From positions 62,001 to 126,000 of the forward strand of contig BDGG01000005.1 of NCBI GenBank assembly GCA_001949185.1: a stretch of DNA of 64,000 nucleotides, given 5' to 3'. This document shows, piece after piece, positions 3,544-64,000 of the stretch. The stretch comes from Ramazzottius varieornatus. Lineage: Eukaryota > Animalia > Tardigrada. The notes beneath the pieces are model-generated. The model was not told the origin of the DNA, made no database searches, and was given only the letters and a program-made list of their open reading frames with translations. Both the position numbers and the translations under genes were made by a program. Numbering within the stretch: position 1 is the stretch's first letter; every line of letters starts with the position of its first letter.

Positions 3544-6312
3544 CTAATTTATCGTCGATAACCTGGTTGGGTACGGCACGTATCGAGCGGAAGGATCGTA
3601 GTAGCCAGCAGCGTAGGAGGATACCACCGAGGGTGGATGCTGTGTACAGTAGACTGACAGGTCCTCCGCCACATCCTCGTACTCCGTCGCCGATCCTTCA
3701 CCCTTTCCCCTCATGTCCGGACTCTTCAGCAAACTTTCATGGACGAAGTTGTGGTTGTTGGACAAGGAGGTGAAGGACTTTGGCGATGGTGGACCGGAGA
3801 AGGGTTGCGAGGCACTTCTGGCACAGACAGCGTAGTCGTAATGTCCGACACCTTCGAAAGAAAAAAACAACAGAACATTACTCTTTGACAATTCGCTGAA
3901 GGCTGATATAACTGATGGATGTTGTATTGTAAAAATTAAGCAGCCTTCGATCAACTAGGACGTGGGCAAAGGAGCTGTACCAGATCAAGTGGCGCACGTT
4001 TTCATTGTTACTGGTTGAAGATGCGCGCCACTTAGAAAAAAACGATCTGGGTCAAAGCATTTGCCCACGTCTCAATCCTGATAGATAATATTCTGATCGA
4101 GGTACCTTCTTGCTGGCCCGTAATGACGTAGTCCGGTGCTACTGGTCTGCGGAATGTCGACGAGGACGTCTTGGTGGCCAAGGCGTCTTCTTTCTCAGAC
4201 ATACAGCAGCATCCTCGACAGATGCAAAGACACAACAAGAGTAACACGATGGCTACAACGGCGGCTGTGCCACCAAGAACGTAAATCAGGCCCTTCTTGG
4301 GTCTTTCCATCGAACTTTCGTCGGGAAGACTGAGGCGCGCGTCAAACGCCAACGTTATCACCTCGTTGTCCTTCAGCTGGGAGCCGTCTCTACCCTGGAT
4401 GCTTGTGTAGCACATGTAGGTACCGACATGTGAAGCGTTGAAGTTGGCGATGTCGAAGATACATCGATACCAGTTGTCCCCACTTTCGTAGCGGCTACAT
4501 CCCAGCATGTCGATCTTCTTCTCAAAGTTGGGATCATCAATGGCCGCCTTGTGCCACTGCAGAAACGAATATTGATAACGTAATCAAGAGAATTCAAAAG
4601 GTTTTTTGTACTTTACAGGTTTGAACCACTACTTACGCCGGTAACTGTATGGGATGGCACGCAACTTTTAACGAGACAGCTCAGCGTGGTATTTCCTCCC
4701 GGCATCACTTTATTCAGGGTTGCGTCAATCTTCACAATCTGAGGCTTGATATCGATGCAATCTGAAAAGCACGAAGTGACAAATCTTTGTTCAGATGAAT
4801 AGAAATATTGGAACAATTTAATTCCTTCAAGCGTAAACCCACCATTGACTTGGACCTCGAAGTTATAACTGATGGACCCGAAAATATTGGTCGCAATGCA
4901 CGTGTAGTTCCCAGCGTCGTCACGTGTGATTTCTGAGATCACGACGCGGTGATCTGCGAAGTGCGGGGAAGTGTCTCTTGGCCGGTGAAAATTTTCGCTT
5001 TTCCGCTCCTGACTGATAGTGCGACTAAAGTAGTCCTTCCCATCTTTCAGCCAGCGGTAAGTCACCTCGGGAGGTCCCGAAGCTTTGCACTTCAGCTCGA
5101 TCCGCCCTCCTAACATTTCCCGCACTGTCGTAAGCATACTTCCGGGTCTCTTAAAGCTTGGCACGCCTAAACAAACAGAAGCTTTTTACACGAAAGCGAA
5201 AGATAATACCGGTGAATGAAAAGAAACGAACGCCAACTTTACTTACTTCCTTTTCGAGCCCTCTGAGGATATTCCAAGAAAGCTTTTCTTTCTCCCTCGG
5301 GCAAGAGGCACACATCTGACCCTGCAAGAAGAGCGAACATTTGCAACAGCCGTTCTTATTTTCAAGTATCATCGTGTCTTGAAAGGAAAGAGAGCTCAAA
5401 GAAAATGAGGCAGGGAGGCTTGAGAAACTGTAGCTACAGTCTGAAGTATTCCAGCCTTTCAAATCTGCTCCTTGTTCAGCTCTTCATTACTTTCCTTTCA
5501 GCGTGATTATTTTCTTTATGCTGATTGTTCCGTCAGTTCTGACCACCTAAAGTGTAGCAAGGGAAAGGGAGGCAAAAGCTATTATGTGCAAAGGTGTGCT
5601 TGGCGACATGAAGAGCGAGCAGCAAGACGTCGAGTGTTTGACCAGACGAAAGGGGATTCTTGAGTGGATCATGCCTCGTCTTTGCCTTGCTCAAACACAA
5701 AATCTCAGCCATCCCAACTCTTACCTTTAACGATCAGCGTCACATTGGCATGTTTTGGACCATGACCAAAGGCCGCCGTGCATTCGTACAATGCCTGATC
5801 TTCCTCCGTCACATTGCGAATGTAGAAGCTACCTTTCCGACTTTCCTTGATGGATCGCACTCGCGAGTCTTCTTTGGCCGGACCTTCCGTTTCGAAAGCC
5901 AGGCCGTCCTTCTTCCACGACACATCGACGTTCCCTCCAACCTTCAGCGGACAATCGATTCGCAGTCTTTTGAATCCTTTCAGCACCATGATGTGTGATG
6001 GTGGAGGGCGGTCTTTCTCGGACTTCGGGCTTTCCAATTCCGCACTGTCGAGAGGCTCTTCATCGAAGCTCGCGAAACTTTCTGTGGAATCTGTAGAGGA
6101 AGAAGGATACATGCATATAGAAACCGTTAATTCTTGGATGTGTCATTAATATTCAGCAATCACTCACATAGTTCGCCATCACGGCAATAGGCTTCGGAAA
6201 CAGTTTTCTTCCGTGCTTTGCTTTTCTCCACCTTTCTGCGTTTCTGACTGTCTGCGAGGGAAATGACACAAAGCAGAGCGAAGAGAAGCATTCTAATCCG
6301 AGTGGCATCCAT
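3544..6312 (-). CDS. FGFRL1/nou-darake-like receptor: signal peptide, 3 Ig domains, TM helix, short kinase-less tail; multi-exon
   Basis: Signal peptide MDATRIRMLLFALLCVISLA (ATG at 6312). Ig1 has IDCP..VSWKKDG..DQALYECTA. Ig2 has PSFKRP..LKCKASG..WLKDG..DAGNYTCIATNIFG. Ig3 has LSCLVKS..VGTYMC. TM is LIYVLGGTAAVVAIVLLLLCLCIC. The Tyr-rich last exon ends at the 3544 stop with no kinase motifs. Confidence 0.7.
3958..4072. mobile_element. Palindromic MITE-like element, family A (copy 1, intronic)
   Basis: Terminal inverted repeats GACGTGGGCAAA / TTTGCCCACGTC, inner CCAGATC / GATCTGG and AAGTGGCGCAC / GCGCGCCACTT. Confidence 0.75.
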
Positions 6313-44797: not shown

Positions 44798-47700
44798 TCA
44801 CGTCATTTCGTTCTCAATTTCTAACGCGAGAAGATCTTCATCGTCTTCCATATCAGACGTCGCGTATCCCGCCACTACAACTTTCCAATCGATACAGTTC
44901 GGAAGTTTCCGTACGGGGATGTACCGAAACAGCAGTGAAGTGTCATCTGGAAAAAAAACTCCTTCTGGCTTAGCGTGCCAACTTCAGCTTACCGAAAGCA
45001 ATGGTTGCTCCAAATACTGTACTAAACAGATGGCGATACTGGCGATGGGAGAATTTACCATTGATTTCGACGCTGTTGCGCCACTGCAGCTTTCCACTTT
45101 CATGACTGGAGGCTTTCGAGACGGTGTCACCCTCTAGATCGACGAACTTCTTCTTCCGGTTGACAAGTTCTGCAAAACAGACAGTACATAGCATACTTTT
45201 TCAGTCGACTAGCGGTGTCATGCTCTCTGTGAAGAATGAATGTATGTATGTCTACACACTATGGTAGATGTTCTGAAGGGTGGAGAAGGCCACTGTTACG
45301 ATGTTCATTGGCGGCGGAGTGACCGGTGCAGTGTCCATGTTCATGACGAGCTTGGACCTGCCGTACTTCCACTCAAGGTCCGATCGAGCTTGAATGCGTT
45401 GGTAGGTGTCGGACAACATGGCGATCAACAGGTTGATCAAGACTACGAGAACATGTATGTCAAGAACTATCTTCTGACTTATTAGATATTGGTCGAAGAT
45501 CTGCGGTCCGCGCGACCTTCCTGGATACTTACCGACCATCGTGGCTGAAAAAATAAAAAAGTTTATTGAGTTATCATCCGGAGTAACTTTTGCGAGCTGA
45601 ATGAAAAAGCGCGATGTACTTAGAAGGTAAACCGCAAAGAGTAAGACGATCAGTAGTGGTGCGAAGGAGGGTCCGTATTTTGCATCCGGAAGGTCTGGCG
45701 GGTTCACAGTCCCGAACAGCGCAAAGTACAGCAGCACGAAGCTGGCTAAAGGATCCACTGCCATATTCAATATGTGGGCGTCCTCGTACTCATAGTCTGG
45801 TGGTGGAGGATAGACGTCTTTGTAAAGTGATGACAGCATGAAAGTGAAGCCAACCATGAAGAGAATCAGAATCACCAGGAACCGAAGAAGGTCTTTGATA
45901 ACATCCCGAATGATAATCGCGAAGGGCCTAAGTTACATCACCGTAGGTTGGTTTCAACTTGAAGACAATGGTGAAAAGATTTGCATACCCGAACATTTGG
46001 TGAAAACTCAGGTAGCTGCAAAGATGGTGTTATCTTCCCAATGCAAATATTTCACTTTGAAATTTGTCGAATGGAACGTAAGCAAATGAATTGAGCCAGA
46101 TCGCTGGCTCACTGGCGCATGTTTCCGTTGTTATTGGCTGGAGGTGTGCGCCACTTAAGAAAACGATCTGATTGGGTCCATTTGCCCACGTCCTAAATTT
46201 TTACCTGATTATTTGGATGAAAGCAAAGAGGCTGGCCAGCGCGAAGATCTGATTTCGAGCATACAGTACTTCCGTCGTTTTGTAGTAGTCACTGTCGGCA
46301 AAAGCGAAGGCGATACCGTGAAGTACCACACCCATCAGGCACAGCACAATGATGACCACTCGAATCAGTCCCAGTCCATTCCGTTCTTCCTTCGTAGTAA
46401 ACTCGTGCACAATCTTCCCAGCGATCCATATAAGTAGAAATACTTCTACTGCTGTGGGTGCTACGTTGCGAAATTCGTATAGCTTCTCGAACGAGGCCAT
46501 AGCCGCCAGCAGTAGCAGTAATATGAAGAACATGTGGCTGACTATGTGCGACATCAGCTTGACAAAGGGAATATAGTTGTACTTGTGTCCCAGAGGAAGA
46601 CTCGCGAAAAACCAGAATGGAGGAAAGAACAGGAAACCCAGAAAGGTGACGAAGCTATGCGTGTCACTCCAGTGCTGGTTACCGTGCCAAACCGCCGTCA
46701 GGTAGCGCTGAACGGCGGGAAGTGCCACCACTTCCTTGTGCTCGCCCTAGAAGTAAAACCCAGTTAAAGGTGCGAATTCAGTTCCAGATACGGGAATGTA
46801 TGAAGTGAAGAAATGTGCAATATTCGAACAAATGATATACGGCAAACGAAACTTACAAGATCGTTATCTCAAGTGGCGCAAGCTTTTGCTCTTATTGGCT
46901 GGAGCATGCGCCACTTGAAACAACGACTTTGCACGTTGATTTGCCGGCCTCCCATACTTCTTGTTAGAAAAGATTACTAGTAATACAGCAAAGCTTTTAC
47001 CTCGATCAGGATATTCATCAAAGACTTGTCCGTCGAATCCACAGCTCGGAGGATGACAGCCGGGTTGAACTTGTTGCAAGAGATAACCAGTAAGTCACTG
47101 GCCAAAGATTCGACAAACTTCGCGGCCAGGTTCAGATCTCGTTCTTGCTCCTTTTCTCGCCCAGCCAAGTCTGTGTAAAACCGAGAGATTTTTAGCCCGA
47201 TTTCCACTGGAGATGCAGAGTTGATAATAAAATCTTGCAAGGGACGATTCTGTTCCTTTCGACCACACATCATCAAGTCGAACAAGAACGTCCGGTCTTC
47301 CATCAGTGAGTATGCATCGTAGGCTTTTGTGACGAGGAACAAAACCACCTGGGCCTTTGTGGCTCCTGCTGCTAGTCCCATCGGGATCTTTCCGTCCTTG
47401 TTTTTGACCGAGGTGGCAGCACCTGACTCAACCAGGTACTTGACCACTTTTAGATGACCCGAGATAGCAGCAAAATGTAACGGCGTCCAGTCATTCTGCA
47501 AAACAGTTTGAATAGAAAAATTTATTACGAAATTTTCTGTATGCTGCAGTTCGCCCTTGTAAGGCTCACATTGTCCAGTGCCGTGATGTCCGAGCCTTGG
47601 CCGACCAGCAGCGTGACCATTTCCAGGTGTCCATTTCCGGCTGCGAGCATCAGCGCCGTCCTTCCCTTCTTGTCACGGATGTCAATTTTCGGTCCGATTT

Positions 47701-50700
47701 TACTCAACAGCAGTGAAGCGACTGGTAACTTCCCATTTCTGGCAGCTGTGTGCGTGAGACAAAAGATGCGATTAGACTATCCTGGATGACTTGAAACTTG
47801 GAGGGTACAGTACAGACATTTCTAGTACCTAAATGGAGAGGCGTTGTTTCGGTCATTGTCGTCGCTGCATCCGCCATTACGCCGGTGACGTTAAGTAAAA
47901 GCCGAACGGTATTTTCTTGACCAGAGTGTGAGGCACCTGGAAAACCCATCCAAGGATGAGCTTGCACGGCGTATAACGAGAGCGGTTATGGCGTACAATG
48001 CAAAGCTGTCATTCCAGGCTCGATCTGGAGATGCTTGACCAGGGGATTGTTGGCGGTGGGCTGTTCCGACAAGGTGGTTGCAGGGACATCGACCAACAAC
48101 TCCCGCACAAAATCACTTTGTCCACAAAATGCAGCCTGATAGAGACGAGAACTCGATGAAGCAAGAATCTACACGGAAGCTTCGCTGAGCTTCTAAAAGA
48201 CCTTACCAAGTGTAGCGGTGTCAGTCCTGTCTGGAATGACGTAAGGTCAGACAGGTTTATGGACCGTTAGTGGTTCTAGTCGATCGATCATAAGGTGACT
48301 TACTTTTATACTGCAGACGTTCAAAGAAACTGCATCCCTCAGAGCATCCAGAATTTTCACGTGTCCGTATCTTGCTGCAAGATGTAGAGGAGTAAGTCCT
48401 TCCTGGAATACATCCCGATAAATTTACGAAGCAAGATTTTTCAAACGAGGTTATTACCTTGTTTTCTTCGGCAACAGGTGCGCCTTCCGCGATCAGCATT
48501 TTTACCATAATATCGCGACCGGTCGCAGCAGCGATATGCAACACTGACGACTCCGTAGACTGTAAGCCCCACAAGTTAGTTCACAACTACAAGTTCCATC
48601 TGTCGCAGCTTATCGTACCTTCACTTTCGACGACACGACCAGCTCTCTGTTATGAGCCAGGAGCACTTGAATGACGTCCACGCACCCATTTTTGGCGGCC
48701 TAAGTGACCAAGAACCTCAGCTTGATGTTGCATGAGTAATGAGAGAGAACCCACTGATAAATTTACCGTGTGAGCGATGTTCAGTCCCTTCTGCAAGAAT
48801 ACGACGTAAAAGATTACTCAATATACCAGGTCGCACGTTGGTTGTGTCGCATTGAGTTTTACCATGTCGTAAATATCGAAGAAGTCAGTATCTCTGAGGG
48901 TTTGGAGGAAAAGTTTCACTATGTTCGCATGATTTCCGGTAGCTCCCAGATGGGCTGGTGTGCGACCGCCCCCATCTTTTGCCAAGCCGTCGGCACCAAG
49001 ACGCAGCAGATGTTCACAGATGCTCAGCTGACCGGCTTGTGCAGCTAAGAATACACTCTCGTCGAAATTTTCCTTCCAGTTATAGTTTGACTATGGACTT
49101 CATGGGACCATTTCATACCCAAGTGCAGCGGTGTTTTTTTCGACATTGACACGACGTCTGTGGCTGCTTGGTATTTATCGACCAGCAACTCCACGATGTT
49201 CGAAGCGCCTCTCTCGGCTGCAACATGCGCTGCGGTGACGCCATCTTTGTTCTTGGCGTTCACGAAAGCCTTGTGTTGTAGCAGGATGTCCACCACATCC
49301 AAGTGGTCGTTTTCAGCCGCCAGATGAAGGGCCGCTCGTCCTTCCTCGTCGAACACGTCCACGCGGGCGTGGTTCTTGAGTAGCACCCGAACAATGTCGG
49401 CGTTTCCTTGTTGACTGGCCGTGAGCAACGGCGACCAACCGTTCTATGAAAAATACAGAACTACAGGTGCAGAAAATTCTACTTGAAATTTTATTCGTTG
49501 ATATTAATCGACAGAGAAGGCCCTCTACCTTGTCCTGCTTGTTAATGCCGGTAGCAAGCTTTTCGGCACCAAAGTAACCGATAATGGTCGAGAGGATTTC
49601 AAAGTTTCCATAACGTGCACAGTAATGGAGGGGAGTTTCCAAAGACTTAAAAACAGAAACAGACCGATCGAAAAATATGACTTCAGCAAGAGAAGGCTCC
49701 CTATACCTCTATTGTTGGGGCGTTTGGGTCACCGTGAAAATCCAGCAAGAGCTGAGTTAGCATTTGGTCCTCTCCGGGAAAATGTTCCTTATCCAAAGTC
49801 ACTTGGGCCACTAGAGGAGAAATACAAAATTATGAGACTTTGGTTCACTGAGTGTTGCGGTACAAGGAGGAAACTAACCATGGTGCATTGCGGTTTCACC
49901 CACGTCGTCTGCCACGTTCACCGCTTGGGCAGCAGCGTCGCGGGACTCGGTACGGGTGATGAAGTCCAACAGTTCCCTGACCACGTCGTAATTGCAGCAC
50001 AATGTCGCAATGTGTAAAGGGGTCTCTCCGCCATGGTTTGTGTCGTTGACGCTGGCTCCTTCAGCCATCAAGATCTTGACAAGCTTTAGCGAACCCGCTG
50101 TTACAGCAACTACCAAAAACCTACGGTAAGAGTTATTCGGATAAGGAGCGGGCTGATAAACTGCTTACCGTGTAACGGAGTGGTTCCATCAGTCATGCGA
50201 GACACAGGCCTAGCTCCAGATTTCAAAAGGTACTCAGCGGACAGATCTCCGTGAGATGACCTTGCTGCAAGGTGTAGGGGACTTTCTTCCAACGGGCCAC
50301 CTGTAAAAGAAGAACAGAGACGGACGTGTGCGTCCGTGCCAGTAATGGCCATTCGACGAAGCGAGCAAGTGTGGACTGGAATACCTTTAGCATTGACCGC
50401 AGCGCCCCTTCCTATCAGAACCTCCACGACATTGGGGAATCCCGCTTCCACAGCTCTGAAAGACACAATTGAGGTGTACGCTGCATTATGACGCTATGAG
50501 ATACCCTATAAGATTTTTACATGTGCAAAGAAGTGAAGCCCTCCTTCGTCGGCGCGTCGACCTTGGAGCCGTTCTTCAGGAGAACTTGCACGACATCCGC
50601 ATGACCTAACAACAAAAGTGCCAAGTTAAAATCGCTTTTCTGCTGGAATCTAGATTACGTACGTACACGCACCGTTCTTGGCTGCCACATGCAAGGCGAG

Positions 50701-52740
50701 ATTCCCTTCCTTGTTAGGCATACTGACCGGAACGCCTCGTTTGATAAGCAGCTCCACGGTAGCGGCGTGACCGGCCAAGGCGGCAATATGCGCTAAGGTC
50801 GAACCGTCCTTGGTTCTCGTCTTCAGAGACCCACGGAAACGTTCTACCAGCGTGTCCACCACGTTGGTCAGACCCTTCTCAACAGCTAAGCTCAAGGCCG
50901 ATCGCCCTTCATTGTCCAGTATGTTCGGATCTGCACGCTTCTCGTACAAGAGGTTGACCGCGTCGATGTGCCCGAGCCTAGTTGCGAGGTGGAGCAAAGT
51001 CTCTCCATCAACCTATGTTTAGAATTTTCAACATATTTCTCCTGTGCAAACCAATAGGCTTGGATGGCCTTTTTAGCCTTACATTCTGGTTATCCAGAGG
51101 CGCTTCTTTTTCCAAAAGAATTCGGAATATCTCGGTGTTTTTCTTGCGGATCATGTAGTGAGCCAAGGTGTCTCCGTTCTGTTCCTGAAAAAACATATCG
51201 ATGGTCGCTACGTCTTCCGGGTACACGGTCATGATGTTTATGTCTGCGGGAATGCGGAAGCATAATATACGAACTGGATTTTGATAACAGAGTTGCTGAT
51301 GGGCGTCCTCTGACAGCAGTCCGTGGATGACGTGAAGGTTGCCGTTTTCCGTTGCGCGCCACAACGGAATAAACCCTTCCTGCAAAACATCCGTTTGAGC
51401 ATAACTCAATAAGGAAATCGTGTACAGTCATGCAACAGTAGTTTAATTTGTTTGATCTTCCTCACCTTGTCCATCGTCATCTTTCCTTCCGGTCCCGACA
51501 ACGGGAGGAGAAACTGCGTGATCGGCCAAGCTCCGAACTTCCGCATGACGGAAATATGGATTGGCAATTGTTCCAGTATCTACAACATACAGCAGACACT
51601 TATGCACAGACTTCGTTGTTCTCCGATGATGTGAGAACATAACCGATGACTTTGGAGTTTCCGCAGAAGCTCGGTGAAACAAAGAGATGATGGCTAAACA
51701 GTACTAACTCCTCCTTTAATGGTAGCATCCGCACCCAGCTGGATGATCAGGCGGACCATTTCTTCCTTGGCTTCTCTCGCAGCAATGTGAAGTGCTGTCT
51801 CCCCTTCCTACGCAGAATGTCAGATTTCACTGAGATGGCTGGCAGTTGGCGTTGAAGACTTACAAACCTGGTTTTTCGCGTTGATGTCGGCTCCTAACTT
51901 GACTAGCATTTCCGCGGGCACCGGTCGACTTTCTTTCGCACAAACCATCAATGGCGTCATTAGGGTTTCCTACAACGGAAGGAATATTGGTCGGCGCTTC
52001 TGAAACATTAGAACGTGGGCAAACGACCTGAACCAGATCGTTTTCCCAAGTGACGCAGACGATCAGCCAATAACAATGAAAATGTGCGCCACTTTAGAAT
52101 TAGATCTCGTTCAATATCATAGCTCGATAAAGTCCCGTACCTCTTCGGCGAAAGCAATGGCCGCGGTGACCTGCTCCTGCTTCTCCGGATAGCGATTCGC
52201 TTTCTCCAAGAGCCGAAGAAGGTTCTCCAGAGACGTCCAGCTGGAGGTCTGACATGCTTCCATAACCAAGAGCCCAACGTTTTCCGGCAGTTCCGGGTTT
52301 TCCAGCATGTTGCCCGATCTCGGTGACGGCGACCGTCGGAAGAATTCGCCTTGTTCTCGATGGCCTTGATCCTCTCTTCCGACGTCAAGTTCATCCCCGT
52401 TCATGCTGCTGCCTGGCCTTTCCTCGTTCCTTGAGGACAGTCGCAGTCCTTGTGCCAGTAGCTGCTCTTGGGTCGCCATCACTGATGTGGACTTGGGTAC
52501 TTTCCATTTCGCGGTCGTAGGAAGGAACTTGGCGTGGGCTGATTGAGACTTCACCTTCGAGACATCCGTTTGAGATGGTTCGACAATCTTGACATTGGTA
52601 TGTTCGTCGGTAAGAGGCGATGGTGGAGGGGGAAAGTCTTCGGTCATGCCAATGTGATAGGTCCCGTTCTGGGAAGGAGCAGGTAGAGGAGGCAAGACGC
52701 GAACTCCCATAAAGTTCTTCCTCTCGTGAATTCGCGCCAT
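44798..52740 (-). CDS. nompC: TRPN/NompC mechanosensitive channel, paralog 1 (complete, many exons)
   Basis: Long ankyrin array (e.g. ETPLHYCARYGN, ARVDVFDEEGRAALHLAAE, HKAFVNAK), linker FLFDLMMCG..SASPVE, S1-S6 with LYFALFG pore, LINLLIAMLSDTYQRIQARSDLEWKYG and terminal IDWKVVV. Stop TGA at 44798-44800. Confidence 0.92.
46073..46193. mobile_element. MITE-like family A copy (intronic)
   Basis: GGAACGTAAGCAAATGAATTGAGCCAGATCG..TGGCGCA..GTGCGCCACTT..CGATCTGA..TTTGCCCACGTCC|TAA. Confidence 0.75.
46835..46953. mobile_element. MITE-like family A copy (intronic)
   Basis: GGCAAACGAA..GATCGTTATCTCAAGTGGCGCA..TATTGGCTGGAG..TGCGCCACTTG..TTTGCCGGCCTCC. Confidence 0.7.
52011..52115. mobile_element. MITE-like family A copy (intronic)
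   Basis: TTA|GAACGTGGGCAAACGACCTGAACCAGATCGTTTTCCCAAGTGACGCA..CAGCCAATAACAATGAAA..TGCGCCACTT; the spacer is in the opposite orientation to the copy at 46073. Confidence 0.7.
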
Positions 52741-53265
52741 TGAGCTCGTGCACTATGCTGCTCGCTCAAACTGGGAGATCGGATCATAGAGTAAGTGAAA
52801 ATCTCTCACCGGGTCTTTATAGCAAGTGTTAGACGCAGTGGGCTTGCTTGTTCGTGGTTATGAGGGATTCAACCCGGAAATCGAAAATCTGTCGAACTAT
52901 TATAGTTCGGCAGGTTTTCTGGACTGTTTACTTATGACGTCCGCAACAGCGTGCATGACTTCCGCATTGTTCTTGAGCTTGGTTTGTTTGTGTTAATACA
53001 TGTGTATGCTTGAATGAATATCTTGAGTCCTTGCTATCCTGTGCCTCGGTTGTCCTGCGCTCAAGCTCAAATGGTTGTTTGCGATCTCAAAATCAAACTA
53101 ACCAGCCTGCAGACTACGGGCAAATGAGACTTTACATGAAAGTTATTAGATGCAAAGAAGAATAGACTACAGTAAAAGTCAAAAACGCCGTCGGAAAAAA
53201 ATTGCATGCATGCATATGGTTCGTGAAAGAAAATAAATTATTACTCTACCTCAAATATCGAGCTA

Positions 53266-56200
53266 TCAAATCTCCTGCTCAATGCCGAGAAGCACCGCGG
53301 TATTCTCCAGCTCATAATCGGTTGCAGAGCCTCCGCGATACGCAGATACCACGGATTCCCAGTCGATCACATCGACCAGCCTTTTCACAGGCACCTTCTT
53401 GAAATGCGCCGAAGCGCCACCTATCATGTGAAATACACATTAGACCACACCAACGGAAGCCTCTCTTTGACCAGTAAACCGATCACGTGAATAACACTTC
53501 CCGTGCAAACAAAGTGTACCTTCTCCGGAGTCTTGGAAGCTTTTTCGCCAGCTTAGGACATGCGAACCTTCTCTGCTGGTCTTGCCACTCGGCGCGAGCT
53601 CTTCGGTCGACCCAGATCCGCCACCTCTACGCATACTCATACACTCTGGAAACATGACACGATATTCTTCCTTGTAAGTGTTGCACCACCGAAATCGACT
53701 AAGATATTACTTTTTAGACCCTTATAGGCATAGGTCGCGGAGACGGTAATCACATTGAGAGGCGGTGGGCTGATGGCGGACTTCTGAGTATTGATGATTA
53801 GCTTGGCGCGCCCAAACTTCCACTCAAGGTCCGATCGAGCTTGAATACGCTGGTATGTGTCCGATAACATGGCAATCAACAGGTTGATTAGTACAACCAT
53901 GGTCACTATAAGAGAGATGTTATCATTGTTATGAGGCCTTGTCGGTACGAATAGTTCGTGATCTAGAGGCCGGCAAACGAACGGTCGCCTTAAGTGGTGT
54001 ACGCGTCCAGCCTATAGCAATGAAATGTGCGCCACTAGAGGTAGCAATCTCGCACCTACGACCTCCAGCTCCAGTTAACTTTTGTGTTGGTCGACGGTGA
54101 AGTTGGGGACTTACCCATGAGGAAAATCATAACCAATATTTTTATAAGCGTGCTTGAAAACGGTGGACTGTTGGGCGCCGCTGGCATGTGCGTGGGATCC
54201 TACAATAAAACCCAGAAAATTTAGAGAAATAAGACATTTTGGTAATGTACAGTACTTACCACGAGGCCGAAAAGAGCGAAGTAGAGATATTGAAAGCTGA
54301 CGAGCGGATCCGAAGCCATATCGATGATAACGCTGTGCGGATAGTAATAACCGCTTTCCGTCATGTTAGGCTGCTGAGTATCCAGGAACATGGCGGACGA
54401 ACTGAAGGAGAAGCCGATCATGAACAATGAAAGCACAACCAGGAAGCGCATTAGGTCCTTCACGAGGTCTTGAATGATGATTCCCATGGGACCGAACATG
54501 TAGTGGAAGGATAGATAACTAAACAACGAAAAAGTAACTTCTCACTACACATCCGATCGGCGTATTGATTGGTTTCTGCTACAATGTGTTAAGCATCTTG
54601 CTTATGAAATATGAATTTCGGCCTGTTTCCGTACGATTCTTAACTTAGCAATGTTCTACGGCTCATTAGTCCCTGGAACGTCTTCAAGGACTTACTTCAC
54701 AATCTGAATGCAAGCAAACAGTCCCGCGGTAGCAAACAGTTGGTTCCGAACGTACAGCAGGATGGTTGCCGTTGTGCCGGTAAACGCGAAAGCGATGCCA
54801 TGCATGATGATACCCAACGCACAAAAGCCCAACACGATAATCCGGATCCATCCCAGTCCGCTACGTTCTTCCGCTGTGAAGAACTCATCGATGACTTTTC
54901 CGATTAGCCATACCAGCAGCAGCCATTCCGCCCATTCCGGTAGCGGATCTATTCGATCGTACAGGTTTTCGAATGGCGAGAGGAAAACAAGGATGAGTAC
55001 CACGATGAAGAACAGATGGCTGACAATGGAACTCATCAGCTTCATGAAGGGTATTTCGCTATAACGCCCAATGGGCAGCGACATCACCAGCCAGAACGGC
55101 GGGAACAGCAGGAATGCCAGGAACATCATGGTACTCTTTCCATCGGACCATTCCTGGTTGCCGTACCATACATCACTGAGGAAACGTTGTACCTGGTTAA
55201 CAGATAAATTCATGTGACAATATTGTACATGCTAGAGCCATCTGCGTACACCTGCATACACCTGACTGTGCAGTTACTGTATCAGGGAGTATGCATGTGA
55301 ATGAAAAAGTGTGAAAGTCATACCGATGGCTCAGCTACGACTTCTTTGTGGCTTCCTTCCACCAAAATGTCCATCAGAGACTTGTTGTTCTGGTCGATAG
55401 CTCGAAGGACCAAGGCAGGACCGAAGCGGTTACAGGAAATGGTCAGCAAGTCATTTCCCAGGGTCTCGCAGAACTTGCTGGCCAAGATGCTGTCTCGCTC
55501 AAGCTCTTTCTCGCGTGAGGACTGGTCTTGGTAGAACCTGGATAGTTTCAGTGCGATTTCCACGGGTGAAGGCGAGGTCGTGATGAAGTCTTCCAGGGCT
55601 TTTTGGTGGAACATCTTGCCGCAGTTCATGAGATCGAACAGGAAAGCGCGGTCTTCAAGGAGCTTGAATACGTCGTGATCTTTCAAGATTAGGTACGTCA
55701 GGACATCGGTCTTCAGGGCATTGGCTGCATAACAGAGAGGAATCTTTCCATCGGAGGTTTCGCTGACTGGAGAAGCTCCTGCTTCAACCAGCACTTTGAC
55801 CACTTTGAGGTACCCGGCTTTCGCAGCATGGTGCAATGCCGTCCATCCATTCTGTACAGAACACACGAGTAAAGATGACCGTAGAAGAGTGAGCAGATCG
55901 AAACTCCCAAACACTCAAAATCCTTCAACGTTGCCTGTGGGCAACTGAAACATTCTACCTATCTGGAATTCCGGAATGAATTTCATCTTTTTACAAAATG
56001 CAAAATTGTCATCTACGGTAGCTATTTGTATGGTCATGTTGTTTACATTGTCTTCCGAAGCGACATCGGCTCCTTGCCCAAGCAACAAGGAAGCCATTTC
56101 CTCATGGCCATTGGCACCAGCTAGCATCAGAGCGTTACGACCCTTCTTGTCGCGAGTATCGAGCTGAGCGGAGGACTTGCTAAGAAGCAAACCCACGATC

Positions 56201-59200
56201 GGAAGATGGCCATTGAGAGCAGCTAAATGAAGAGGAATCAAGCCGCTAATATCAGCGGCTGCATCCACCTGCACACCTATAAAGACAGAAGGATACCACT
56301 GCATGTTCTTACCGAAAGGCTGAACTTATTACCTGGGTAGTTCAACAGTAGACGGACCATGTTCTCCTGCCCACTATGAGCAGCGAGGTGCAGCGGAGTA
56401 AGGCCTGGTTCGCCACCAATTTCTTTGACGATGGCGTTGTTGATTGTTGGCTGATCTGATACAATGGTTGCTGGTACTGTTGTGAGCAGCTCACGCGCAA
56501 ACTCGACTTGCCCATAGAAAGCTGTAAAGCGGCAATTGAATATATGTATGAGAGTCAGTTCAGCAGGCGGAATGAAAGGTACTCTGGGATAAGTTACCCG
56601 CTAGGTGGAGGGCCGATAGGCCAGTCTTCACACTGGATAACTTTAGCGAGATGAGTTCTTTCAGGATCTCGAGGACGGAAACATATCCAAATTTGGCTGC
56701 GAGATGAAGAGGTGTCATACCGTCAGCGTTCTCTTCCACCGGCGACGCCCCTCCTTCCACGAGGACCTTGACTACTTCTGCATGACCTCCGGCTGCCGCC
56801 AGATGGAGTGCCGTTGAGTCGTCGGTCTACGACCAAATTTAATCGTAATGTCTTTGCATAAATTTGATACTGTTAACCCAGCCAGGAGTAACTTGGACCC
56901 ACCCGGATTTTTGCTGTGATAACTTGCTGTTTGTCGAAGCTCATCAAAAGGCGAACGACCTCATCGGATCCATTTTGGGCTGCAATATGAGCCACAGTAT
57001 ATCCATTCTGGAGAGGAGAAACTTCCATCATTGTGGGACGAGACATAGTGAAGAATGCACTGTACCAACCTCGTCTACCATTGTCATAGGATTTGAGTCT
57101 GCTTGAACTTTCAGAAAAAGCTCCACGATGGAAGAATGATCGTTTTCGGCGGCCAAATGCAACGGCGTAAGCCCTTTCTGAAGTAACACTAGACGGTAAA
57201 ACATATCTCTCCATACAAGCAAAGCTTCGATCAAAGCTGCACACCTGGTCTTTGGCGTTCGGGTCGGCTTTCATCCGTAACAGCACATCGCAAATTTCCA
57301 GTTTCCCGTACTGCGCAGCCATATGGAGAGGTGTTCGTTTCGCCTACCAAAAGACAGTTCAGTCTTTGATTTCACACGATTTTGACGGGGATTTTAGTTT
57401 CGTACCAGCGACAATGCATCGATAGCGGCATCGTACTTTTCCACCAAAACCTGGACTATCTCGGTCCATCCCTTCATGGCCGCCAAATGTGTGGGAGTCA
57501 AGCCTAGTTTACTCTTGGCGTTGACGAAAGCTTTGTGGTGAAGCAGCAGGTCGACAATGTCCAGGTGCCCGTTTTCTGCTGCGATGTGCAAAGCCGCTTT
57601 TCCTTGCTGACAGAGACATATGGATACATATACGTGGTAGAACAGAAGGAAAACGGGTGTGCGCACTGTACCTCGTCGAACACATCAACTCGCGCGTTAT
57701 TTCTCAACAACTGCCGGACAACCTCTTCGTGGCCGTGTTCCGACGCAGTCAGCAGCGGCGACCAACCGTTCTGTTTCAATAAAAAAACATTTGAGTTCCC
57801 GACCGATAGTTTCCGAGAGGCCAAACTCGTCACGAACCTTCGCCTGTCTGTTCAACGCGACTTGCAGTCGACCAGGTCCTTGATGCTTGATAATGGTCAT
57901 GAGGATATTCACGTTCCCGCATCGAGCGCAGTAGTGCAGCGGAGTCTCATTGCTCTTAAATATTGCGGCCAATTGTGTCACACATACTAAACATGCGAGT
58001 CGAAGTAAAGAACAATCGAACCATTTTGGTTTGTATGTTGACGTCGGCGTTATAGTCCAGGAGAAGTAGAACGATCTTGACATCTTCCCCCTCGGAATGG
58101 GCCATATCGGTGGTGAGCTCCGTCGCGTAATGAAAGCTAGTTTCTCCTTCCTACAAGATACTCAAGATGTGGTTTCAGCCTTCGAAGTAACCAAGAGATC
58201 GTCGTACACTAGTTTGATCCACTCACCAGATTCTGCGCGTTGACCATGTTAGTGGCATCATTGCGCGACTGCTTGTTGGCCACATGCTCGATCAGTTCTT
58301 TGACGACAAAGTAATTGCAGGCTCGTACTGCAACGTGGAGCGCCGTCTCCCCGCTCGCACTGGTGGCCAGTGGGTTGGCTTCTTCCAACAGGAGAATCTG
58401 TACCATCCGAAGTGCTCCAAACCTGGCTGCGACATGCATGGCCGTTTCCCCGTTCTCCATTGTGTTGTTCACGTCAGCGCCAGATTTGATCAACATCTCG
58501 GCACAGAGCTCCCCATTGGGTACACGAGCGGCAATATGCAGCGGAGTCTCCCCCGCAGCGCCCCCTTTCACGTCCACTGAAGCTCCGTAACCGAGCAGCG
58601 CCTCCGTCACCTGCGGCTTCCCGTACTCCACTAAAAACAAGAAACGTTTTCATAAAATCCAAGCCTGAAACTAAACTTATTTTCTGCTTGGATGTAGAGA
58701 AAGAGAACGTTTCATTCTTTGGGATAGATGCTAATTTGAGATTTGCTGTTTTTCCAGATCTCGATGAACTTCCTCCTTTTTCGGCGGCGCTACTTCAAAC
58801 TTAATCGATCAGTCGGTGGACGAATTCGCCAGTTCACTACGAATGTCTCTTGTGCTAAAATCCAAAACCTTGGCTTGCTCGACTTGCCTGCCAGATGTAA
58901 TGCCGTGTAGTTTTCGTTTGTTTTCGCGTCCACAGGCGAACCGTTCTCGATCAGGATTCCGGTGACTCTGACGTGGCCTACGCGAAACAACTTTCAGTGA
59001 CTAACTAAGAGGCACACGCGTTTCTACCGGAAGTGTACCTGTTCGAGCTGCGGCGTGGAGTGCCAGAGCTCCAGACTTGTTTGGCATATTTAGTGGGACA
59101 CCGCGCTTGAGGAGTGCGATGGTGGCATCGGGATGTCCAGTCAAAGCGGCCAAGTGGGCCAACGTACTACCATCCTGCAAAGTACTGGAATGTGTGCTTT

Positions 59201-61387
59201 TGCAAACCACAAAGCACGTCCGTCCGATCTTGAAATCAATGGTCCAACTACGCATATCGCGCTGAAAGGGAGACTGATCAATAAAGCTCGCTGTATACCT
59301 GTGTACGAGCCATAATAGATCCTTTGAATTTCTCCGTCAAGGTCTCCACCACATTCGTCACTCCGTTCTCCACAGCCAAATGCAGAGCGGTACGTTGATA
59401 CTGTGAAAATCATAGATTCGAATACCATCGTTTGATACCAAAAATCACAATCCATTAACAAACTGGGGCGTCGGTCGGCAAACTACTATAACCCAGCATG
59501 GTCGTCATTTTAAGTGACGCACATCTGCCTTGTCCTTGGCTGGAAGTGTGCGCCACTTACGAAGACGATCCTGCTCAAGTCGTTTGCCAACATTCCGAAC
59601 GTATAATCTTCGTACTCGGTCTGCAATTTCCGGGTTGGCTTTGTAGTCGTGAAGTAGTCCAAGCACAGAGTCGTTGTGGGTGTGGGTGGCAATGTGCAGT
59701 AAAGTTTGGCCATCGTCCTGGGAATAAACTCGTGGAAGACCCACTCGACCAAGTCTAATATGGCATCTTGATCAGAGCACAGAAATTCTTACATTCTGAA
59801 TATCGACCGGACCGCCAGCTTCGATCAGGATTCGCAGAAGCTCGCTGTTATTTTGACGCAGCACGTAGTGCATCACAGAGTCCCCGTTTTGCAGCTGGAA
59901 GGCGTACCATCTATATCGTGAATGTGTGCTAATGAATGAAACACTGCGAAAAAGTTCGTACCTTGTTTTGGTACGATAGCTGCTGGGGCGCTAGTGCCAT
60001 GAGAAGTTCTTTAACGACATGCGGATTGCCTGCTTCCGCGGCGCGCCAGATTGGCATGAAGCCATCCTTCAATCACAAAACGTCGTGACACGGTATGTTG
60101 GTTGTTCAGAATGCTTTTGGGCTTTCGAACGATTTCCTACAACCAATTCACCAGATGTTACCTTGTCCAATGCAAGTCTGCCTTCTTCGCCGGACACAGG
60201 CAACAAAATCTGTACGATGGGCCAGGAGGCGACTTTACGCGAGCAAGCAATATGTAGAGCCAGCCGTCCAGTAGCCTGGAAAACAAGAAGAATTTAAGTA
60301 GTGAGCTGCACACATTTCACAGAAGTCTGGTTTCAATTTCTCTGGTCCTCTGGATACCTCTTCCGGGACCGTTGCATCGGCTCCAATATTTACAAGTAAC
60401 TGGACTACGTCATCTTTGGCGTGCTCGGTTGCAATTGTCAGGACGGTTTCCCCAGCCTGAAAAAAAGGCCGAATGTTGTCCAACTCAACAGTGCGACGAA
60501 CAAACAATCAACCGCCAAAATCTCCTCCTTGTTGACTCACCTTTGATACTGCGTTGACGTTAGCTCCAAGTTTCGTCAAGATTGTGACCTCATGTAGTCT
60601 GCTTTCTTTAACGCAGAGCATCAATGGTGTATACCCGGTTTCCTGATAAAGACGAGTGATAGAGACCTTCGATAAACCAAACTTGACTTTGGTATTTTTA
60701 GAGTGTTACCTCTGAAGTGGTGTTGACGGCGTTGACGATTGCTTCACGTTTTCCATCAAATCTGAAGGCTTTATCCAAAATCTTTAGCTGGTTATCCACT
60801 GATGTCCAACTCTGGGTCAGACAGGATTCCAGCAAGAAAGTTCCGATATTTTCCGGAAGGTCAGTTTCTTCATTGGAGAACTCCATGATGGATTCTGGCG
60901 GGTCCGGAAAGGGTACATGTGCAGCTGGCGTCTCGTTCTCTGAGGCTTCCATCCTGGACGCTAATGAGATCGGATGCGATATGGGGATATTCGGCAAAGG
61001 GGCGCCAGCAGACTGGTTGAACGAGCTGGGAGAGTCGAAGTACTTGGAGGACGATATGCTGATGATGTTGATGGGCCGAATCCGAGGAGAGCTGGTGTTT
61101 TCTTCTTCGAGAGCTTCTTGGACAGGCTGGAGAATCGAGGGCGTGTCGGTGTTTCTCAGTTCTCGTCGGACATCTCTGGACAGCTGGAGCTTTGTCTTGG
61201 GTTTGATCAACCGGACGGCGAACCCTGGTGATGGTTGGACCAGTACGCCACGATTCTCATCAGGAAGATTATCGGGTTGGGTTGATATGTTTTCGGGTGG
61301 AGGTAAATTCTCTCGGTTTTCCGGTAACGTGTCGGTCGACCAGAACCGAGGAGAGGAAGAGGGTGTATTATTTCCGGAATACGACAT
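53266..61387 (-). CDS. nompC: TRPN/NompC mechanosensitive channel, paralog 2 (complete, many exons)
   Basis: Ankyrin array with NompC-typical EYGKPQVTEALLGYGA, ETPLHIAARVPNGELCAEMLIKSGA and AFVNAKSKLGLT. TM domain has YLYFALFGLV, LINLLIAMLSDTYQRIQARSDLEWKFG and terminal IDWESVV. Stop TGA at 53266-53268. Confidence 0.93.
53966..54066. mobile_element. MITE-like family A copy (degenerate, intronic)
   Basis: GAGGCCGGCAAACGAA..AAGTGGTGTAC..CCAGCCTATAGCAATGAAATGTGCGCCACT. Confidence 0.6.
59465..59596. mobile_element. MITE-like family A copy (intronic)
   Basis: CGGCAAAC..GTCGTC..AAGTGACGCAC..TTGGCTGGAAGTGTGCGCCACTT..GACGATC..GTTTGCC. Confidence 0.65.
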
Positions 61388-62075
61388 TATTCCAGTTGGA
61401 TTAGTCTATCACCAAAAACTGTAATTTATTCGAAAAATTCGATATTGGGAACGTGCCACAGCAAAATGTGGAATCCCCTAAGTGCCGTAGTCTCGGTAGA
61501 TCTGCTGGATATCCGTGTGCGTCGATGCTAGGTCCTGTTTGTCAAGAGTGCGTAACAATAGTTCGCGGAGTGTTTAGACATGCATTTCCGGTTCGCCCAA
61601 AGTAAAGTTACTTAGAGGAAGTACTGGGTGTGAATAAGCCAAATCACGACTGACAGCTCTGCTTCATTTTGCGAACCGCTGGTGGACTTGTATATGGAAG
61701 AAACCCTGCATAACGGAGAGTGCCTTTACGGTATAGGCGGCAGATAAGAAAAAGCACCTTCACCTTTGTGGTACCCTAAAGTGAAATGGATCTACGTCTA
61801 TTCCCGGAGACTGTCCCATGACGCAGAACCAACATACGAGCAAAACACACCACAAAGCCCAATGTACCCAGAAAGCCACGGAAGCCGCGATGAAAACTTT
61901 TTTGGGGAAAAAGGATCCAGAAGGACGAGGTGGATAAGAAAGTACAGAAGGAACCATCACCACCCGGAAATGAAAGTCACAGTAAATGGGTAGAGCGCTC
62001 ATATCAGTTTGAAACAAGGAAGAGGTCCAACCATGCATAACATATTTATGCACCAGAAAATCGAATACACAACTT

Positions 62076-64000
62076 TTAAATCTGACCGGCGAATTCGGCC
62101 GTATCTTCGCCCTGTTGCATTTCTCTCTTGTTTTGGTTGTTGTAAATACGAACAACGTCTTTCCAGTCGATGACGTCCACGATTTCCTTCACGGCCGTGG
62201 GTTTCCCAGCTGCAAAGCGAGACAGTATCAGGTACGCAAACGTTACTTCGAGGACGTTTGCGCGTTACTCACTGGATAGGTTTGATGACAGTCGGGAACT
62301 AGTTCGTCTGTCCAATCCTGAAGCTGTACGGGAAGTTGATGCGGACACGATGGCGCTGGAGTCGCAATCTGGAACATTCACAAAACGTTTGCAAGAGTGT
62401 CTCATCACCATCGTCTTGGTTCTTCAGCACTTACATTTGCTATACAGGTATCTAACCCCGTTCACAGCGTACGACACGAGGTTGAGTGGCGCCGGCGTTC
62501 CTTCTGAGATACTCAGGCCGAAAATCAGTCTAGCTCGGCCATACCGCCATTCCGTGTCCGAAGAGCGCTTGATCCGTTCGTAACTGTCCACCATCATGGC
62601 AATGAAGAGCTTCAACAGTACGACCCAAACCACTAAACGAAAGACGGGAAACATGATTGTGGTATATGCCTCTGTAAAGAGGCCAAACCTTACGTACCGA
62701 ACAAGTACACACCGACCAGAATGCGCAGCCAGACATTGCCCGCATTAGGTATCTGATCTTGGAGCGGCAGTGGATGCAAACTCCGGTAACTTTCTTCGGT
62801 TGGATTTTCCATAGGATCGATCAGCTGAAACAGAAAAGCCAGTCAGCTGTATTCGGACCATTCCGTTTGTGCGCCTTTCTGCAAGACCTCACCATCCAAA
62901 TTCCCCAGATCATGTATTCGAGGCTGACCACGGGGTCTCCCACGCGATTCCTGAAGCAAGCACGAAACGCTACGTTATCTAGTTGACAAAGCCGAAGAAT
63001 CAGCGCTTTCTTCATTGGCTTACAGTATTGGACCCGGCCCAGGATAGACAAAATGAGCTTCCGGCCAGAAACCATTGTCCTCGTGCTCCTCCCCTCCTCC
63101 ATGCTCTCCTGCACCTCCATGACTACCTTCATGACCACCACCGTGCCCCCCTTGTCCGTGTTCTGCCTGACCACTGTGGCCTGACGCGGTACCATGCCCC
63201 GCATCTTCAGCGCCATGAGATGGGTTTTCAGACCCGTGCGCTGCTGGCTCATGGTTCGGTTCTTGATGGCCTGCCTTCACCGGACTAACATGTCCTGTCG
63301 AAGGGTGCGCCGCAATCGTTCCGTGACTTCCGGACTGCGGAGCACTGTGTGATACCTGGCGCTTCGGTCGCTTGTGATGGGCTTGTGCCTCGTCAGTCGC
63401 GGTGGCACCAGGTGGGCTACCGACCAGACCATCCTCAGCGGACAGGCGGCTTGTATCCCGAGCTACACTGGCTCGACCGTGGGGTTCCTGGTGTGACGCT
63501 GCTAATGCGGGTCCGTGCTGGCTGGTAGCAGCAGTCGTAGCATCGAAGAGAAGCGGACCTCCATGATGCCGATGTGCCACCTGACCGGCCTTGTACACCT
63601 CGCTGTACAGTGCGGAAAATGCAAAGGTAAAGCCGAGCAAGAAACAACCCAGAAGTACGAGGAAGGTAATCAGGTCTCGGAAGATTTCACCAATCACAAT
63701 ACTCAGCGGACCGAAAAGTCGATGAAACGCCATGTACCTACGTACAAAAATTGGTTGGACGGAAGACTCACTTCATTTTTTTGTAAGCGAGAGAATCGTA
63801 CTTACGACAAAAGTTGGATATGCGAAAGTAGGGACGCAGTCGCGAAGAACTGTGCTCGGATGTACAACAGCGTGACTTGGGTACTGTTGGGGAAGGGGAT
63901 GGCACTTATCTGAATGATGAATCCAATCACACAGAGAATAATCACAAATAACTGTAACCGCCCAAATCCAGTCCGCTCTTCCTTCCTGGTGAACTCGTGA
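62076..64000 (-). CDS. Divergent TRPN/NompC-like channel, paralog 3 (3' part only; runs off the window)
   Basis: HEFTRKEERTGFG, LYIRAQFFA, FHRLFGPLSIVIGEIFRDL, LLKLFIAMMVDSYERIKRSSDTEWRYGRARLI, PAPLNLV and terminal IVDVIDWKDVV are collinear with paralogs 1 and 2. Stop TAA at 62076-62078. Confidence 0.85.

What the first reader, a model, noticed from the sequence alone, without database searches (positions are those of the whole stretch)
63023..63592. TRPN paralog 3 has a ~175-aa histidine/glycine-rich insertion in the extracellular pore turret
Seen: between S5 (..ALYSEVY) and the pore helix, paralog 3 has about 190 residues in one open exon, where paralog 1 has about 14 (PPPPDYEYEDAHIL). The insert has about 25 His, many in GH/EH/SH units (GHGGGHEGSHGGAGEHGGGEEH). 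Established: the S5-pore loop of TRP channels is extracellular, and His-rich tracts bind Zn/Cu/Ni and titrate near neutral pH. Inference: a NompC-derived channel that gained an extracellular metal/pH sensor, plug or matrix tether, an architecture I do not recognise from described TRPN channels.
Basis: partly seen in the sequence, partly recalled or inferred. Interest (0 to 1): 0.9.

Follow-up and report, generated by a model that had tools for sequence, protein, structure and literature searches.

The report
His-rich pore-turret loop in tardigrade NompC paralog
One of four tandem NompC-type channel genes of the tardigrade Ramazzottius varieornatus encodes a 190-residue histidine/glycine-rich loop over the outer pore mouth, and an unrelated CNG channel gene in the same genome has the same kind of loop, but I could not get transcript evidence.

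Summary
On the minus strand, window 63024-63592 is the last 190 codons of one 714-nt exon (63737-63024). The exon first encodes the S4-S5 linker and S5 of the third of four tandem TRPN/NompC genes of Ramazzottius varieornatus.

- **Composition:** 25 His, 34 Gly, 27 Ala, no Cys, no N-glycosylation sequon.
- **Reading frame:** it is the only open frame of six, and it joins the pore-helix exon in phase across a canonical 73-nt intron.
- **Gene state:** the gene looks intact. All homology blocks link in frame through GT-AG introns, including a 24-nt micro-exon.
- **Size:** S5-to-filter distance is 213 residues, against 32-48 in thirteen other TRPN sequences.
- **Not unique in length:** some TRPN-like database fragments have long turrets that are not His-rich.
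- **Nearest His-rich case:** a Paramacrobiotus TRPN has a shorter His/Glu-rich turret, and the tree says it arose separately.
- **Second case:** a CNG channel paralog in the same genome has a ~370-residue His/Gly-rich turret. This scan had flagged it on other DNA, and I verified it. It also carries convertase motifs in its middle.

Best reading: a disordered, titratable, metal- or proton-binding collar on a derived pore subunit. No function is shown.

The parts
63593..63737 (-). First 48 codons of the exon: S4-S5 linker and S5 helix of TRPN paralog 3
   Evidence: Aligns to NOMPC residues 1419-1461. AF2 gives a helix over residues 4-57 with pLDDT above 90. The acceptor AG lies just upstream, after a 68-nt intron.
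63024..63592 (-). 190-codon His/Gly/Ala-rich turret insert, same exon, same frame
   Evidence: Composition and frame statistics. No similar sequence elsewhere in the genome or in 1.84 billion representative proteins. pLDDT 38-50 and no secondary structure.
63563..63574 (-). Small His cluster (HRHH) a few residues after S5
   Evidence: His positions 6, 8 and 9 of the insert.
63359..63370 (-). Single R-x-K-R motif (RPKR, followed by Gln) in the middle of the insert; candidate proprotein-convertase site
   Evidence: Insert residues 75-78. Only 38 of 5000 composition-preserving shuffles contain any such motif.
63080..63211 (-). Dense His/Gly/acidic cluster with His every 4-7 residues, including HGGG units, ending about 25 residues before the pore helix
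   Evidence: His spacing list and segment composition: the last third (insert residues 128-190), which contains this cluster, has 9 His, 20 Gly, 10 Asp+Glu and no Lys/Arg. The only DNA micro-repeats, of 9 and 12 nt, lie at 63096-63139.
62951..63023 (-). 73-nt intron with a canonical GT donor and AG acceptor, at the position of the turret intron of paralog 4
   Evidence: Splicing gives an in-phase junction and a residue pattern matching paralog 1 across the junction.
62893..62950 (-). Pore-helix exon; the usual Phe-Gly at the filter is Trp-Met here
   Evidence: Comparison with NOMPC and the paralogs.
62698..62824 (-). Exon for the post-filter loop and the first half of S6
   Evidence: flanked by introns of 68 and 65 nt.
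62427..62632 (-). Exon for the second half of S6 (Lys where the paralogs have Asn) and the TRP box; 3' boundary not fixed
   Evidence: Weak Pfam Ion_trans match.
63806..64000 (-). S3-S4 exon; it continues to 64064, beyond the window edge
62076..62200 (-). Last coding exon, with the conserved C-terminal motif shared with the paralogs, and the stop codon; 5' boundary approximate

Best explanation
Shown: window 63024-63592 (minus strand) is coding sequence of an intact but fast-evolving TRPN/NompC paralog of Ramazzottius varieornatus. It adds a 190-residue, Cys-free, predicted-disordered loop between S5 and the pore helix. A tetramer would therefore carry four such loops (760 residues, 100 His) around the outer pore mouth. 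Inferred: the loop acts as an extracellular His-based collar. Its calculated net charge flips from about -8 at pH 7.5 to about +9 at pH 6 per subunit. Its His-Gly units resemble known Cu/Zn/Ni-binding peptides. Protons or transition metals would thus change the charge and compaction of the vestibule, and with it cation access to the pore. The single RPKR motif in the middle suggests cleavage by a furin-type convertase in the secretory pathway. That would turn the closed loop into two membrane-anchored arms. Because the filter (Gly to Met) and S6 (Asn to Lys) are also changed, the protein more likely works as a modulatory subunit with its canonical neighbours than as a NompC-like homomer.
For: Coding status: the frame is the only open one of six, and 0.9% of shuffles leave it open. 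Codon-position GC is periodic. It joins the pore-helix exon in phase through a 73-nt GT-AG intron, and all five TM-region introns are 65-73 nt. No consensus-type donor lies inside the exon. Gene integrity: it is collinear with residues 104-1649 of a 1657-residue Hypsibius TRPN. A stop-free GT-AG path of 1139 codons runs upstream. A 24-nt micro-exon has canonical sites. This holds despite a terminal branch of 1.3 changes per site. Bias at the amino-acid level rather than the DNA level: His uses CAT 13 / CAC 12, Gly uses all four codons, and only two tiny DNA repeats are present. Disorder. Charge switch, pI 6.7, no sequon, no hydrophobic segment. RPKR is unlikely by chance (38/5000). Independent parallel: a CNG paralog at G000:C2 5107181-5111472 has a ~370-residue turret with 44 His. 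It carries two R-x-K/R-R motifs in the middle (6/5000 shuffles) and a Gly/His/acidic cluster just before its pore helix. Its tandem neighbour has a ~20-residue turret.
Against: No public protein contains this exon, although R. varieornatus proteins are in the library. This is weak evidence, because only paralog 2 of the four genes surfaced. No ortholog carrying the insert was found in Hypsibius or Paramacrobiotus. The turret is the most variable part of TRP channels (PMC9242649), and other TRPN-like sequences carry long inserts that are not His-rich, so length alone needs no function. The paralog has lost conserved pore residues and may not conduct. Metal binding, cleavage and gating effects are all untested.
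Confidence: 0.4

Rival explanations
1. Neutral low-complexity growth. The turret tolerates insertions, and a duplicated, fast-evolving paralog under relaxed constraint accumulated a disordered segment with no specific role. In this reading the His/Gly bias reflects mutational or compositional drift.
For: The turret and re-entry linker are the variable parts of TRP channels (PMC9242649). TRPN-like sequences P0013, P0008, P0009 and P0021 have S5-to-filter spans of 92, 145, at least 100 and at least 178 residues with 1% His or less. Paralog 3 has the longest branch among this genome's four paralogs (1.32; only the Paramacrobiotus copy P0003 is longer, at 1.39) and altered pore residues. The Paramacrobiotus copy with a His/Glu turret lacks the S6 end and the TRP box in its RefSeq model.
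Against: The insert is not a DNA repeat: synonymous codons are mixed, so the His and Gly content is held at the protein level. The convertase motif is improbable by chance. The same three-part design recurs in an unrelated CNG gene without DNA similarity. About 300 kb of other sampled loci showed no third coding case.
Confidence: 0.27
2. Not part of a working protein. The gene is unexpressed or a young pseudogene, or part of the segment is removed by non-consensus splicing, so the mature protein has no such loop.
For: No transcript data could be obtained. No public protein model includes the exon. Short in-frame, stop-free introns do exist in this gene family: paralog 4 has a 66-nt one in its turret.
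Against: The gene keeps an uninterrupted frame over about 1770 codons and roughly 24-25 exons (19 upstream in the scored path plus six in the TM region; the C-terminal junctions were not solved), with canonical splice sites. This includes a 24-nt micro-exon and holds despite high divergence. Its introns are 55-90 nt as a rule, and the 570-nt segment has no consensus donor and no pyrimidine-rich acceptor inside. Codon-position periodicity fits coding sequence.
Confidence: 0.15
3. Matrix or cuticle tether. After convertase cleavage the two His-rich arms bind extracellular matrix or cuticle around a sensory cilium, through metal-bridged or quinone-type His links. This would give a NompC-type mechanosensor an outside anchor.
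For: The position is extracellular. The arms are long and flexible. The RPKR motif is present. From general knowledge, His-rich Gly-rich proteins act as metal-crosslinked structural proteins in other invertebrates.
Against: No adhesive or matrix domain and no Cys are present. A CNG channel, which needs no mechanical anchor, has the same design. No partner is known.
Confidence: 0.1

Closest known systems
Drosophila NOMPC (PDB 5VKQ), the reference TRPN channel
   Same: NOMPC is the only solved structure matched. The linker-helix to S2 exon scores E 2.3e-25 and S5 scores E 4e-5. It shares the ankyrin array, TRP box and S1-S6 layout.
   Different: NOMPC has about 45 residues from the end of S5 to the filter glycine, against 213 here. 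NOMPC has Phe-Gly at the filter where this gene has Trp-Met. This gene has Lys at the S6 position where its paralogs have Asn.
Paramacrobiotus TRPN-like protein XP_055354606.1 (P0003)
   Same: It is a tardigrade TRPN in a tandem array, on the same contig as two other TRPN genes. Its S5-to-filter span is 76 residues, rich in His (5), Glu, Gly and Ser. It has a dibasic site and a derived filter.
   Different: It is much shorter. The tree puts it in the paralog-4 clade (100/99), and joining it to paralog 3 is rejected (AU p 0.015), so the resemblance arose separately. Its model lacks the end of S6 and the TRP box.
CNG paralog of the same genome (G000:C2 5107181-5111472, minus strand)
   Same: It has a His/Gly-rich, Cys-poor insert at the same topological site, between S5 and the pore helix. 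It has the same three-part layout: a His cluster after S5, a spacer with R-x-K/R-R motifs followed by Gln, and a Gly/His/acidic cluster before the pore helix. It also has a tandem neighbour with a short turret.
   Different: It belongs to a different channel family (best solved match TAX-4, E 1.3e-14). Its insert is about twice as long and richer in Ser/Asp. There is no DNA similarity (best E 0.22), and protein similarity is only modestly above composition. Its unusual filter is shared with the short-turret neighbour, so there the filter change is not tied to the insert.
His-Gly metal-binding peptides (prion octarepeat HGGGW units, histidine-rich glycoprotein, His-rich loops of ZIP/ZnT transporters); from general knowledge
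   Same: High His density with His-Gly units, disorder, and extracellular or lumenal exposure.
   Different: There is no regular repeat unit here. No binding data exist, and the segment is embedded in a channel pore loop.
Furin-processed channel ectodomains (ENaC inhibitory tracts); from general knowledge
   Same: An R-x-K/R-R motif in an extracellular segment of a pore-forming subunit, where cleavage changes gating.
   Different: ENaC is unrelated in fold. Cleavage here is only predicted from the motif.

Membership tests
TRPN / NompC channels | Long N-terminal ankyrin-repeat array | tested here: met
   Pfam Ank families score E 5e-31 on one 249-residue exon. The gene is collinear with residues 104-1649 of a 1657-residue Hypsibius TRPN. 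A stop-free spliced path of 1139 codons lies upstream of the TM region. The repeat number was not counted.
TRPN / NompC channels | Linker helices and S1-S6 closest to NOMPC among solved structures | tested here: met
   5VKQ is the sole hit for both exons tested. The gene lies within the tardigrade TRPN clade with 100/99 support.
TRPN / NompC channels | TRP box with conserved Trp directly after S6 | tested here: met
   Spliced translation of exon 62632-62427.
TRPN / NompC channels | Canonical pore: aromatic-Gly at the filter and Asn (Gln in fly) in S6, part of the 12-residue TRP fingerprint of PMC9242649 | tested here: not met
   Trp-Met replaces Phe-Gly, and Lys replaces Asn. One pore-helix Phe is Ile. 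It is a family member by descent with a derived pore. NompC-like conduction should not be assumed.
TRPN / NompC channels | S5-to-filter segment of ordinary length (32-48 residues in 13 sequences) | tested here: not met
   213 residues.
His-rich metal- or proton-binding disordered segments | His density of 10% or more, with His-Gly units, in an exposed disordered region | tested here: met
   13% His. 11 of 25 His are followed by Gly and 6 are preceded by Gly. pLDDT below 50.
His-rich metal- or proton-binding disordered segments | Measured metal binding or a pH-dependent effect | not testable with these tools
   Only a calculated charge curve exists: pI 6.7, -8 at pH 7.5, +9 at pH 6.
Proprotein-convertase substrates | R-x-K/R-R motif in a lumenal/extracellular, accessible segment | tested here: met
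   RPKR at insert residues 75-78, in a disordered region, with 38/5000 shuffles. Actual cleavage was not testable.

The most novel reading that the evidence does not exclude
Tardigrade sensory P-loop channels of two unrelated families (TRPN and CNG) have each acquired a convertase-cleavable, His/Gly-rich disordered collar at the S5-pore-helix turret. This would be a modular way, not described before, to make tetrameric cation channels respond to (or conduct) transition metals or protons, or to plug them during drying and rehydration.
Probability: 0.2. Interest if true: 0.85.

Novelty: new variant of a known kind. Interest (0 to 1): 0.6.

Why it matters
In TRP and CNG channels the outer turret is usually short and treated as a variable spacer. 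A 190-residue loop with 25 His per subunit would put roughly half-molar imidazole in front of the pore. That figure is my estimate from polymer scaling, not a measurement. If the loop is expressed, it gives a natural, removable module for testing how an extracellular disordered polyampholyte controls ion access. The same design in a CNG paralog argues that it was selected and did not arise by drift. It would also give a handle on tardigrade sensory physiology, which is almost unknown at the molecular level. If instead it is neutral, it is a clean example of how far a pore turret can grow without destroying a gene.

Tried and rejected
- **Contigs of related proteins.** Contigs of the Paramacrobiotus, Hypsibius and unnamed hits could not be fetched, so the organisms behind P0008, P0009, P0013 and P0021 stay unknown.
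- **Homologs of the insert.**
  - The word-indexed protein search with the exon found nothing.
  - phmmer against 1.84 billion representatives matched only the S5 part, at E 3.6e-8 or weaker.
  - The ESM Atlas gave no usable hit.
  - The exact ORF is not in the collection.
- **Copies in the same genome.** There are none. The CNG insert likewise finds only itself.
- **P0003 as the ortholog of paralog 3.** Rejected by the tree and the AU test.
- **Common DNA origin of the TRPN and CNG inserts.** Rejected. The best blastn E is 0.22. The protein score is 128 against 102 +/- 10 for segment shuffles, which is mostly composition plus His-Gly spacing.
- **An intron hidden inside the exon.** No consensus donor is present, but only reads can exclude it.
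- **More His/Gly turrets.** A scan of 60 loci around Ion_trans and cNMP-binding matches found only the TRPN and CNG cases. This sample is limited.
- **Literature.** Searches for tardigrade TRPN, His-rich turrets and the RvY gene identifiers found nothing on this feature.
- I replaced it with an HSP- and coordinate-based splice path.
- **Joined model.** The spliced protein model was used only inside local scripts, for translation, the tree and composition. It was not sent to any search or folding tool.

Full report
**What is there.**
The gene runs on the minus strand. Window 63737-63024 is one stop-free exon. Its first 48 codons align to the S4-S5 linker and S5 of Drosophila NOMPC, residues 1419-1461. 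They hold 25 His, 34 Gly, 27 Ala, 17 Ser, 16 Pro, 14 Glu, no Cys and no N-glycosylation sequon.

**Is it coding?**
- Of the six frames only this one is open; the others have 3-11 stops. Only 176 of 20000 dinucleotide-preserving shuffles leave it open.
- GC is 0.78, 0.58 and 0.46 at codon positions 1, 2 and 3.
- The exon ends at a GT donor. A 73-nt intron leads in phase to the pore-helix exon (62950-62893), and the residues across the junction match paralog 1.
- The five introns of the TM region are 65, 68, 73, 68 and 65 nt, all GT-AG.
- A scan of the exon for consensus-type donors found none, and a 570-nt intron would be far outside this gene's range.
- One caution: paralog 4 has a 66-nt intron in its turret that is in frame and stop-free. 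An open frame alone is therefore not proof.

**Organism and gene.**
The genome is 55.8 Mb in 200 contigs. A GenBank protein of Ramazzottius varieornatus, RvY_09867-2 (GAU98761.1), maps at 97-99% to window 54695-56528. Its contig length equals that of C5. So this is R. varieornatus, and paralog 2 is RvY_09867.

Four TRPN genes lie head to tail on the minus strand. Their TM regions are at about 46400-45260, 54900-53700 and 64650-62430, and the fourth lies 8 kb beyond the window.

Paralog 3 looks intact:
- It is collinear with residues 104-1649 of a 1657-residue Hypsibius TRPN.
- A scored path of GT-AG introns links every homology block upstream over 1139 codons without a stop. Some of its junctions are approximate.
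- A 24-nt ankyrin micro-exon has canonical sites on both sides.
- The TRP box and the C-terminal motif are kept.
- Its terminal branch is 1.3 changes per site. A frame kept over about 1770 codons at that divergence argues for purifying selection.

**Family.**
NOMPC (5VKQ) is the only solved structure matched: E 2.3e-25 for the linker-to-S2 exon. The tree puts the four paralogs with the Hypsibius and Paramacrobiotus TRPNs at 100/99 support. The pore is derived. Trp-Met stands where the others have Phe-Gly, and Lys stands in S6 where the paralogs have Asn. Both positions belong to the conserved TRP fingerprint (PMC9242649). Earlier notes of this scan said the same, and I agree.

**How unusual is the loop?**
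The distance from the S5 tyrosine to the filter is 32-48 residues in thirteen TRPN sequences and about 45 in NOMPC. It is 213 here. Long turrets do exist elsewhere:

| Sequence | S5-to-filter span | His content |
|---|---|---|
| P0013 (clear TRPN, E 1.9e-67 to NOMPC) | 92 | 1% or less |
| P0008 | 145 | 1% or less |
| P0009 | at least 100 | 1% or less |
| P0021 | at least 178 | 1% or less |
| Paramacrobiotus XP_055354606.1 (P0003) | 76 | 5 His, many Glu, Gly and Ser |
| Paralog 3 (this gene) | 213 | 25 His |

P0003 lies on a contig with two other TRPN genes. The tree places it in the paralog-4 clade, and a clade with paralog 3 is rejected (AU p 0.015). The two His-rich turrets therefore arose separately.

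No sequence like the insert exists elsewhere in this genome or in 1.84 billion representative proteins. That also means no public protein model contains this exon. Only paralog 2 of the four genes surfaced in my searches, so this is weak evidence against expression.

**Anatomy of the loop.**
It has three parts:
- a small His cluster just after S5;
- a Ser/Thr/Ala/Pro-rich spacer with one RPKR motif followed by Gln (63370-63359);
- a cluster with His every 4-7 residues, much Gly and Glu and no Lys/Arg (63211-63080), ending about 25 residues before the pore helix.

The RPKR motif appears in only 38 of 5000 shuffles. His uses CAT 13 times and CAC 12 times, and Gly uses all four codons. The only DNA repeats are two tiny ones at 63096-63139. 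The bias therefore sits at the protein level. AF2 on the single sequence gives a confident S5 helix and no structure in the loop, with pLDDT 38-50. The calculated net charge is -8 at pH 7.5 and +9 at pH 6, with pI 6.7.

**A second case.**
I located and checked it.
- At G000:C2 5111472-5107181 (minus strand), a gene whose best solved match is TAX-4 (E 1.3e-14) has about 370 residues between S5 and the pore helix.
- That insert holds 44 His and much Gly and Ser. It has two R-x-K/R-R motifs close together in the middle (6 of 5000 shuffles). A Gly/His/acidic cluster lies just before the pore helix.
- Its tandem neighbour has a turret of about 20 residues.
- The two inserts share no DNA similarity (best E 0.22). 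Their protein score is 128 against 102 +/- 10 for segment shuffles. They are parallel designs, not copies.
- A scan of 60 further channel loci found no third case.

**Reading.**
The best-supported view is a real, exon-encoded, disordered extracellular collar whose chemistry is dominated by His: a proton- and metal-titratable layer over the pore mouth, possibly opened into two arms by a convertase. Given its altered pore, the subunit probably modulates heteromers with its canonical neighbours.

Which steps are shown and which are not:
- **Shown:** the sequence anatomy, the frame, the splice context, gene integrity, uniqueness, and the CNG parallel.
- **Inferred:** extracellular topology (from the NOMPC structure), disorder, the charge switch, metal binding, cleavage, and any effect on gating.
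- **Rivals:** neutral turret growth, no expression or partial splicing, and a matrix tether.

**Limits.**
- The spliced protein model was used only in local scripts. The joined step was left out of all search and folding tools.

Noticed in passing
G000:C2:5107181-5111472 (L036/L037), minus strand: A CNG channel paralog has a ~370-residue His/Gly/Ser-rich insert between S5 and the pore helix, with two R-x-K/R-R motifs in the middle. Its tandem neighbour at C2:5103141-5105560 has a ~20-residue turret. Both lack the usual TIGE-type filter.
   Followed up: yes
window 62893-62950 and 62427-62632, minus strand: Paralog 3 has Trp-Met in place of the filter Phe-Gly, and Lys in place of the S6 Asn. The pore may be non-conducting or have changed selectivity.
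   Followed up: partly
L005:7250-7822 (window-equivalent 71250-71822), minus strand: Paralog 4 reads through a 66-nt in-frame, stop-free intron in its turret. Comparison with the Hypsibius and Paramacrobiotus orthologs shows those 22 codons are absent from the proteins. Short open introns can mimic inserts in this genome.
   Followed up: partly
L005 about 4015-4038 (window-equivalent 68015-68038), minus strand: A 24-nt ankyrin micro-exon of paralog 3 has canonical splice sites on both sides.
   Followed up: yes
proteins P0008 and P0009 (unnamed ENA/Logan fragments): These TRPN-like fragments have turrets of 100 residues or more that are not His-rich. Each also carries an R-x-K/R-R motif, so long TRPN turrets may often be convertase substrates.
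   Followed up: partly
protein P0003 (Paramacrobiotus XP_055354606.1): The RefSeq model with a His/Glu-rich turret lacks the second half of S6 and the TRP box. It is either a mis-model or a decaying copy.
   Followed up: no
window 44800-64000 and beyond: Of the four tandem TRPN genes, only paralog 2 (RvY_09867, three isoforms) surfaced from the public R. varieornatus protein set in my searches. The array may be under-annotated.
   Followed up: partly
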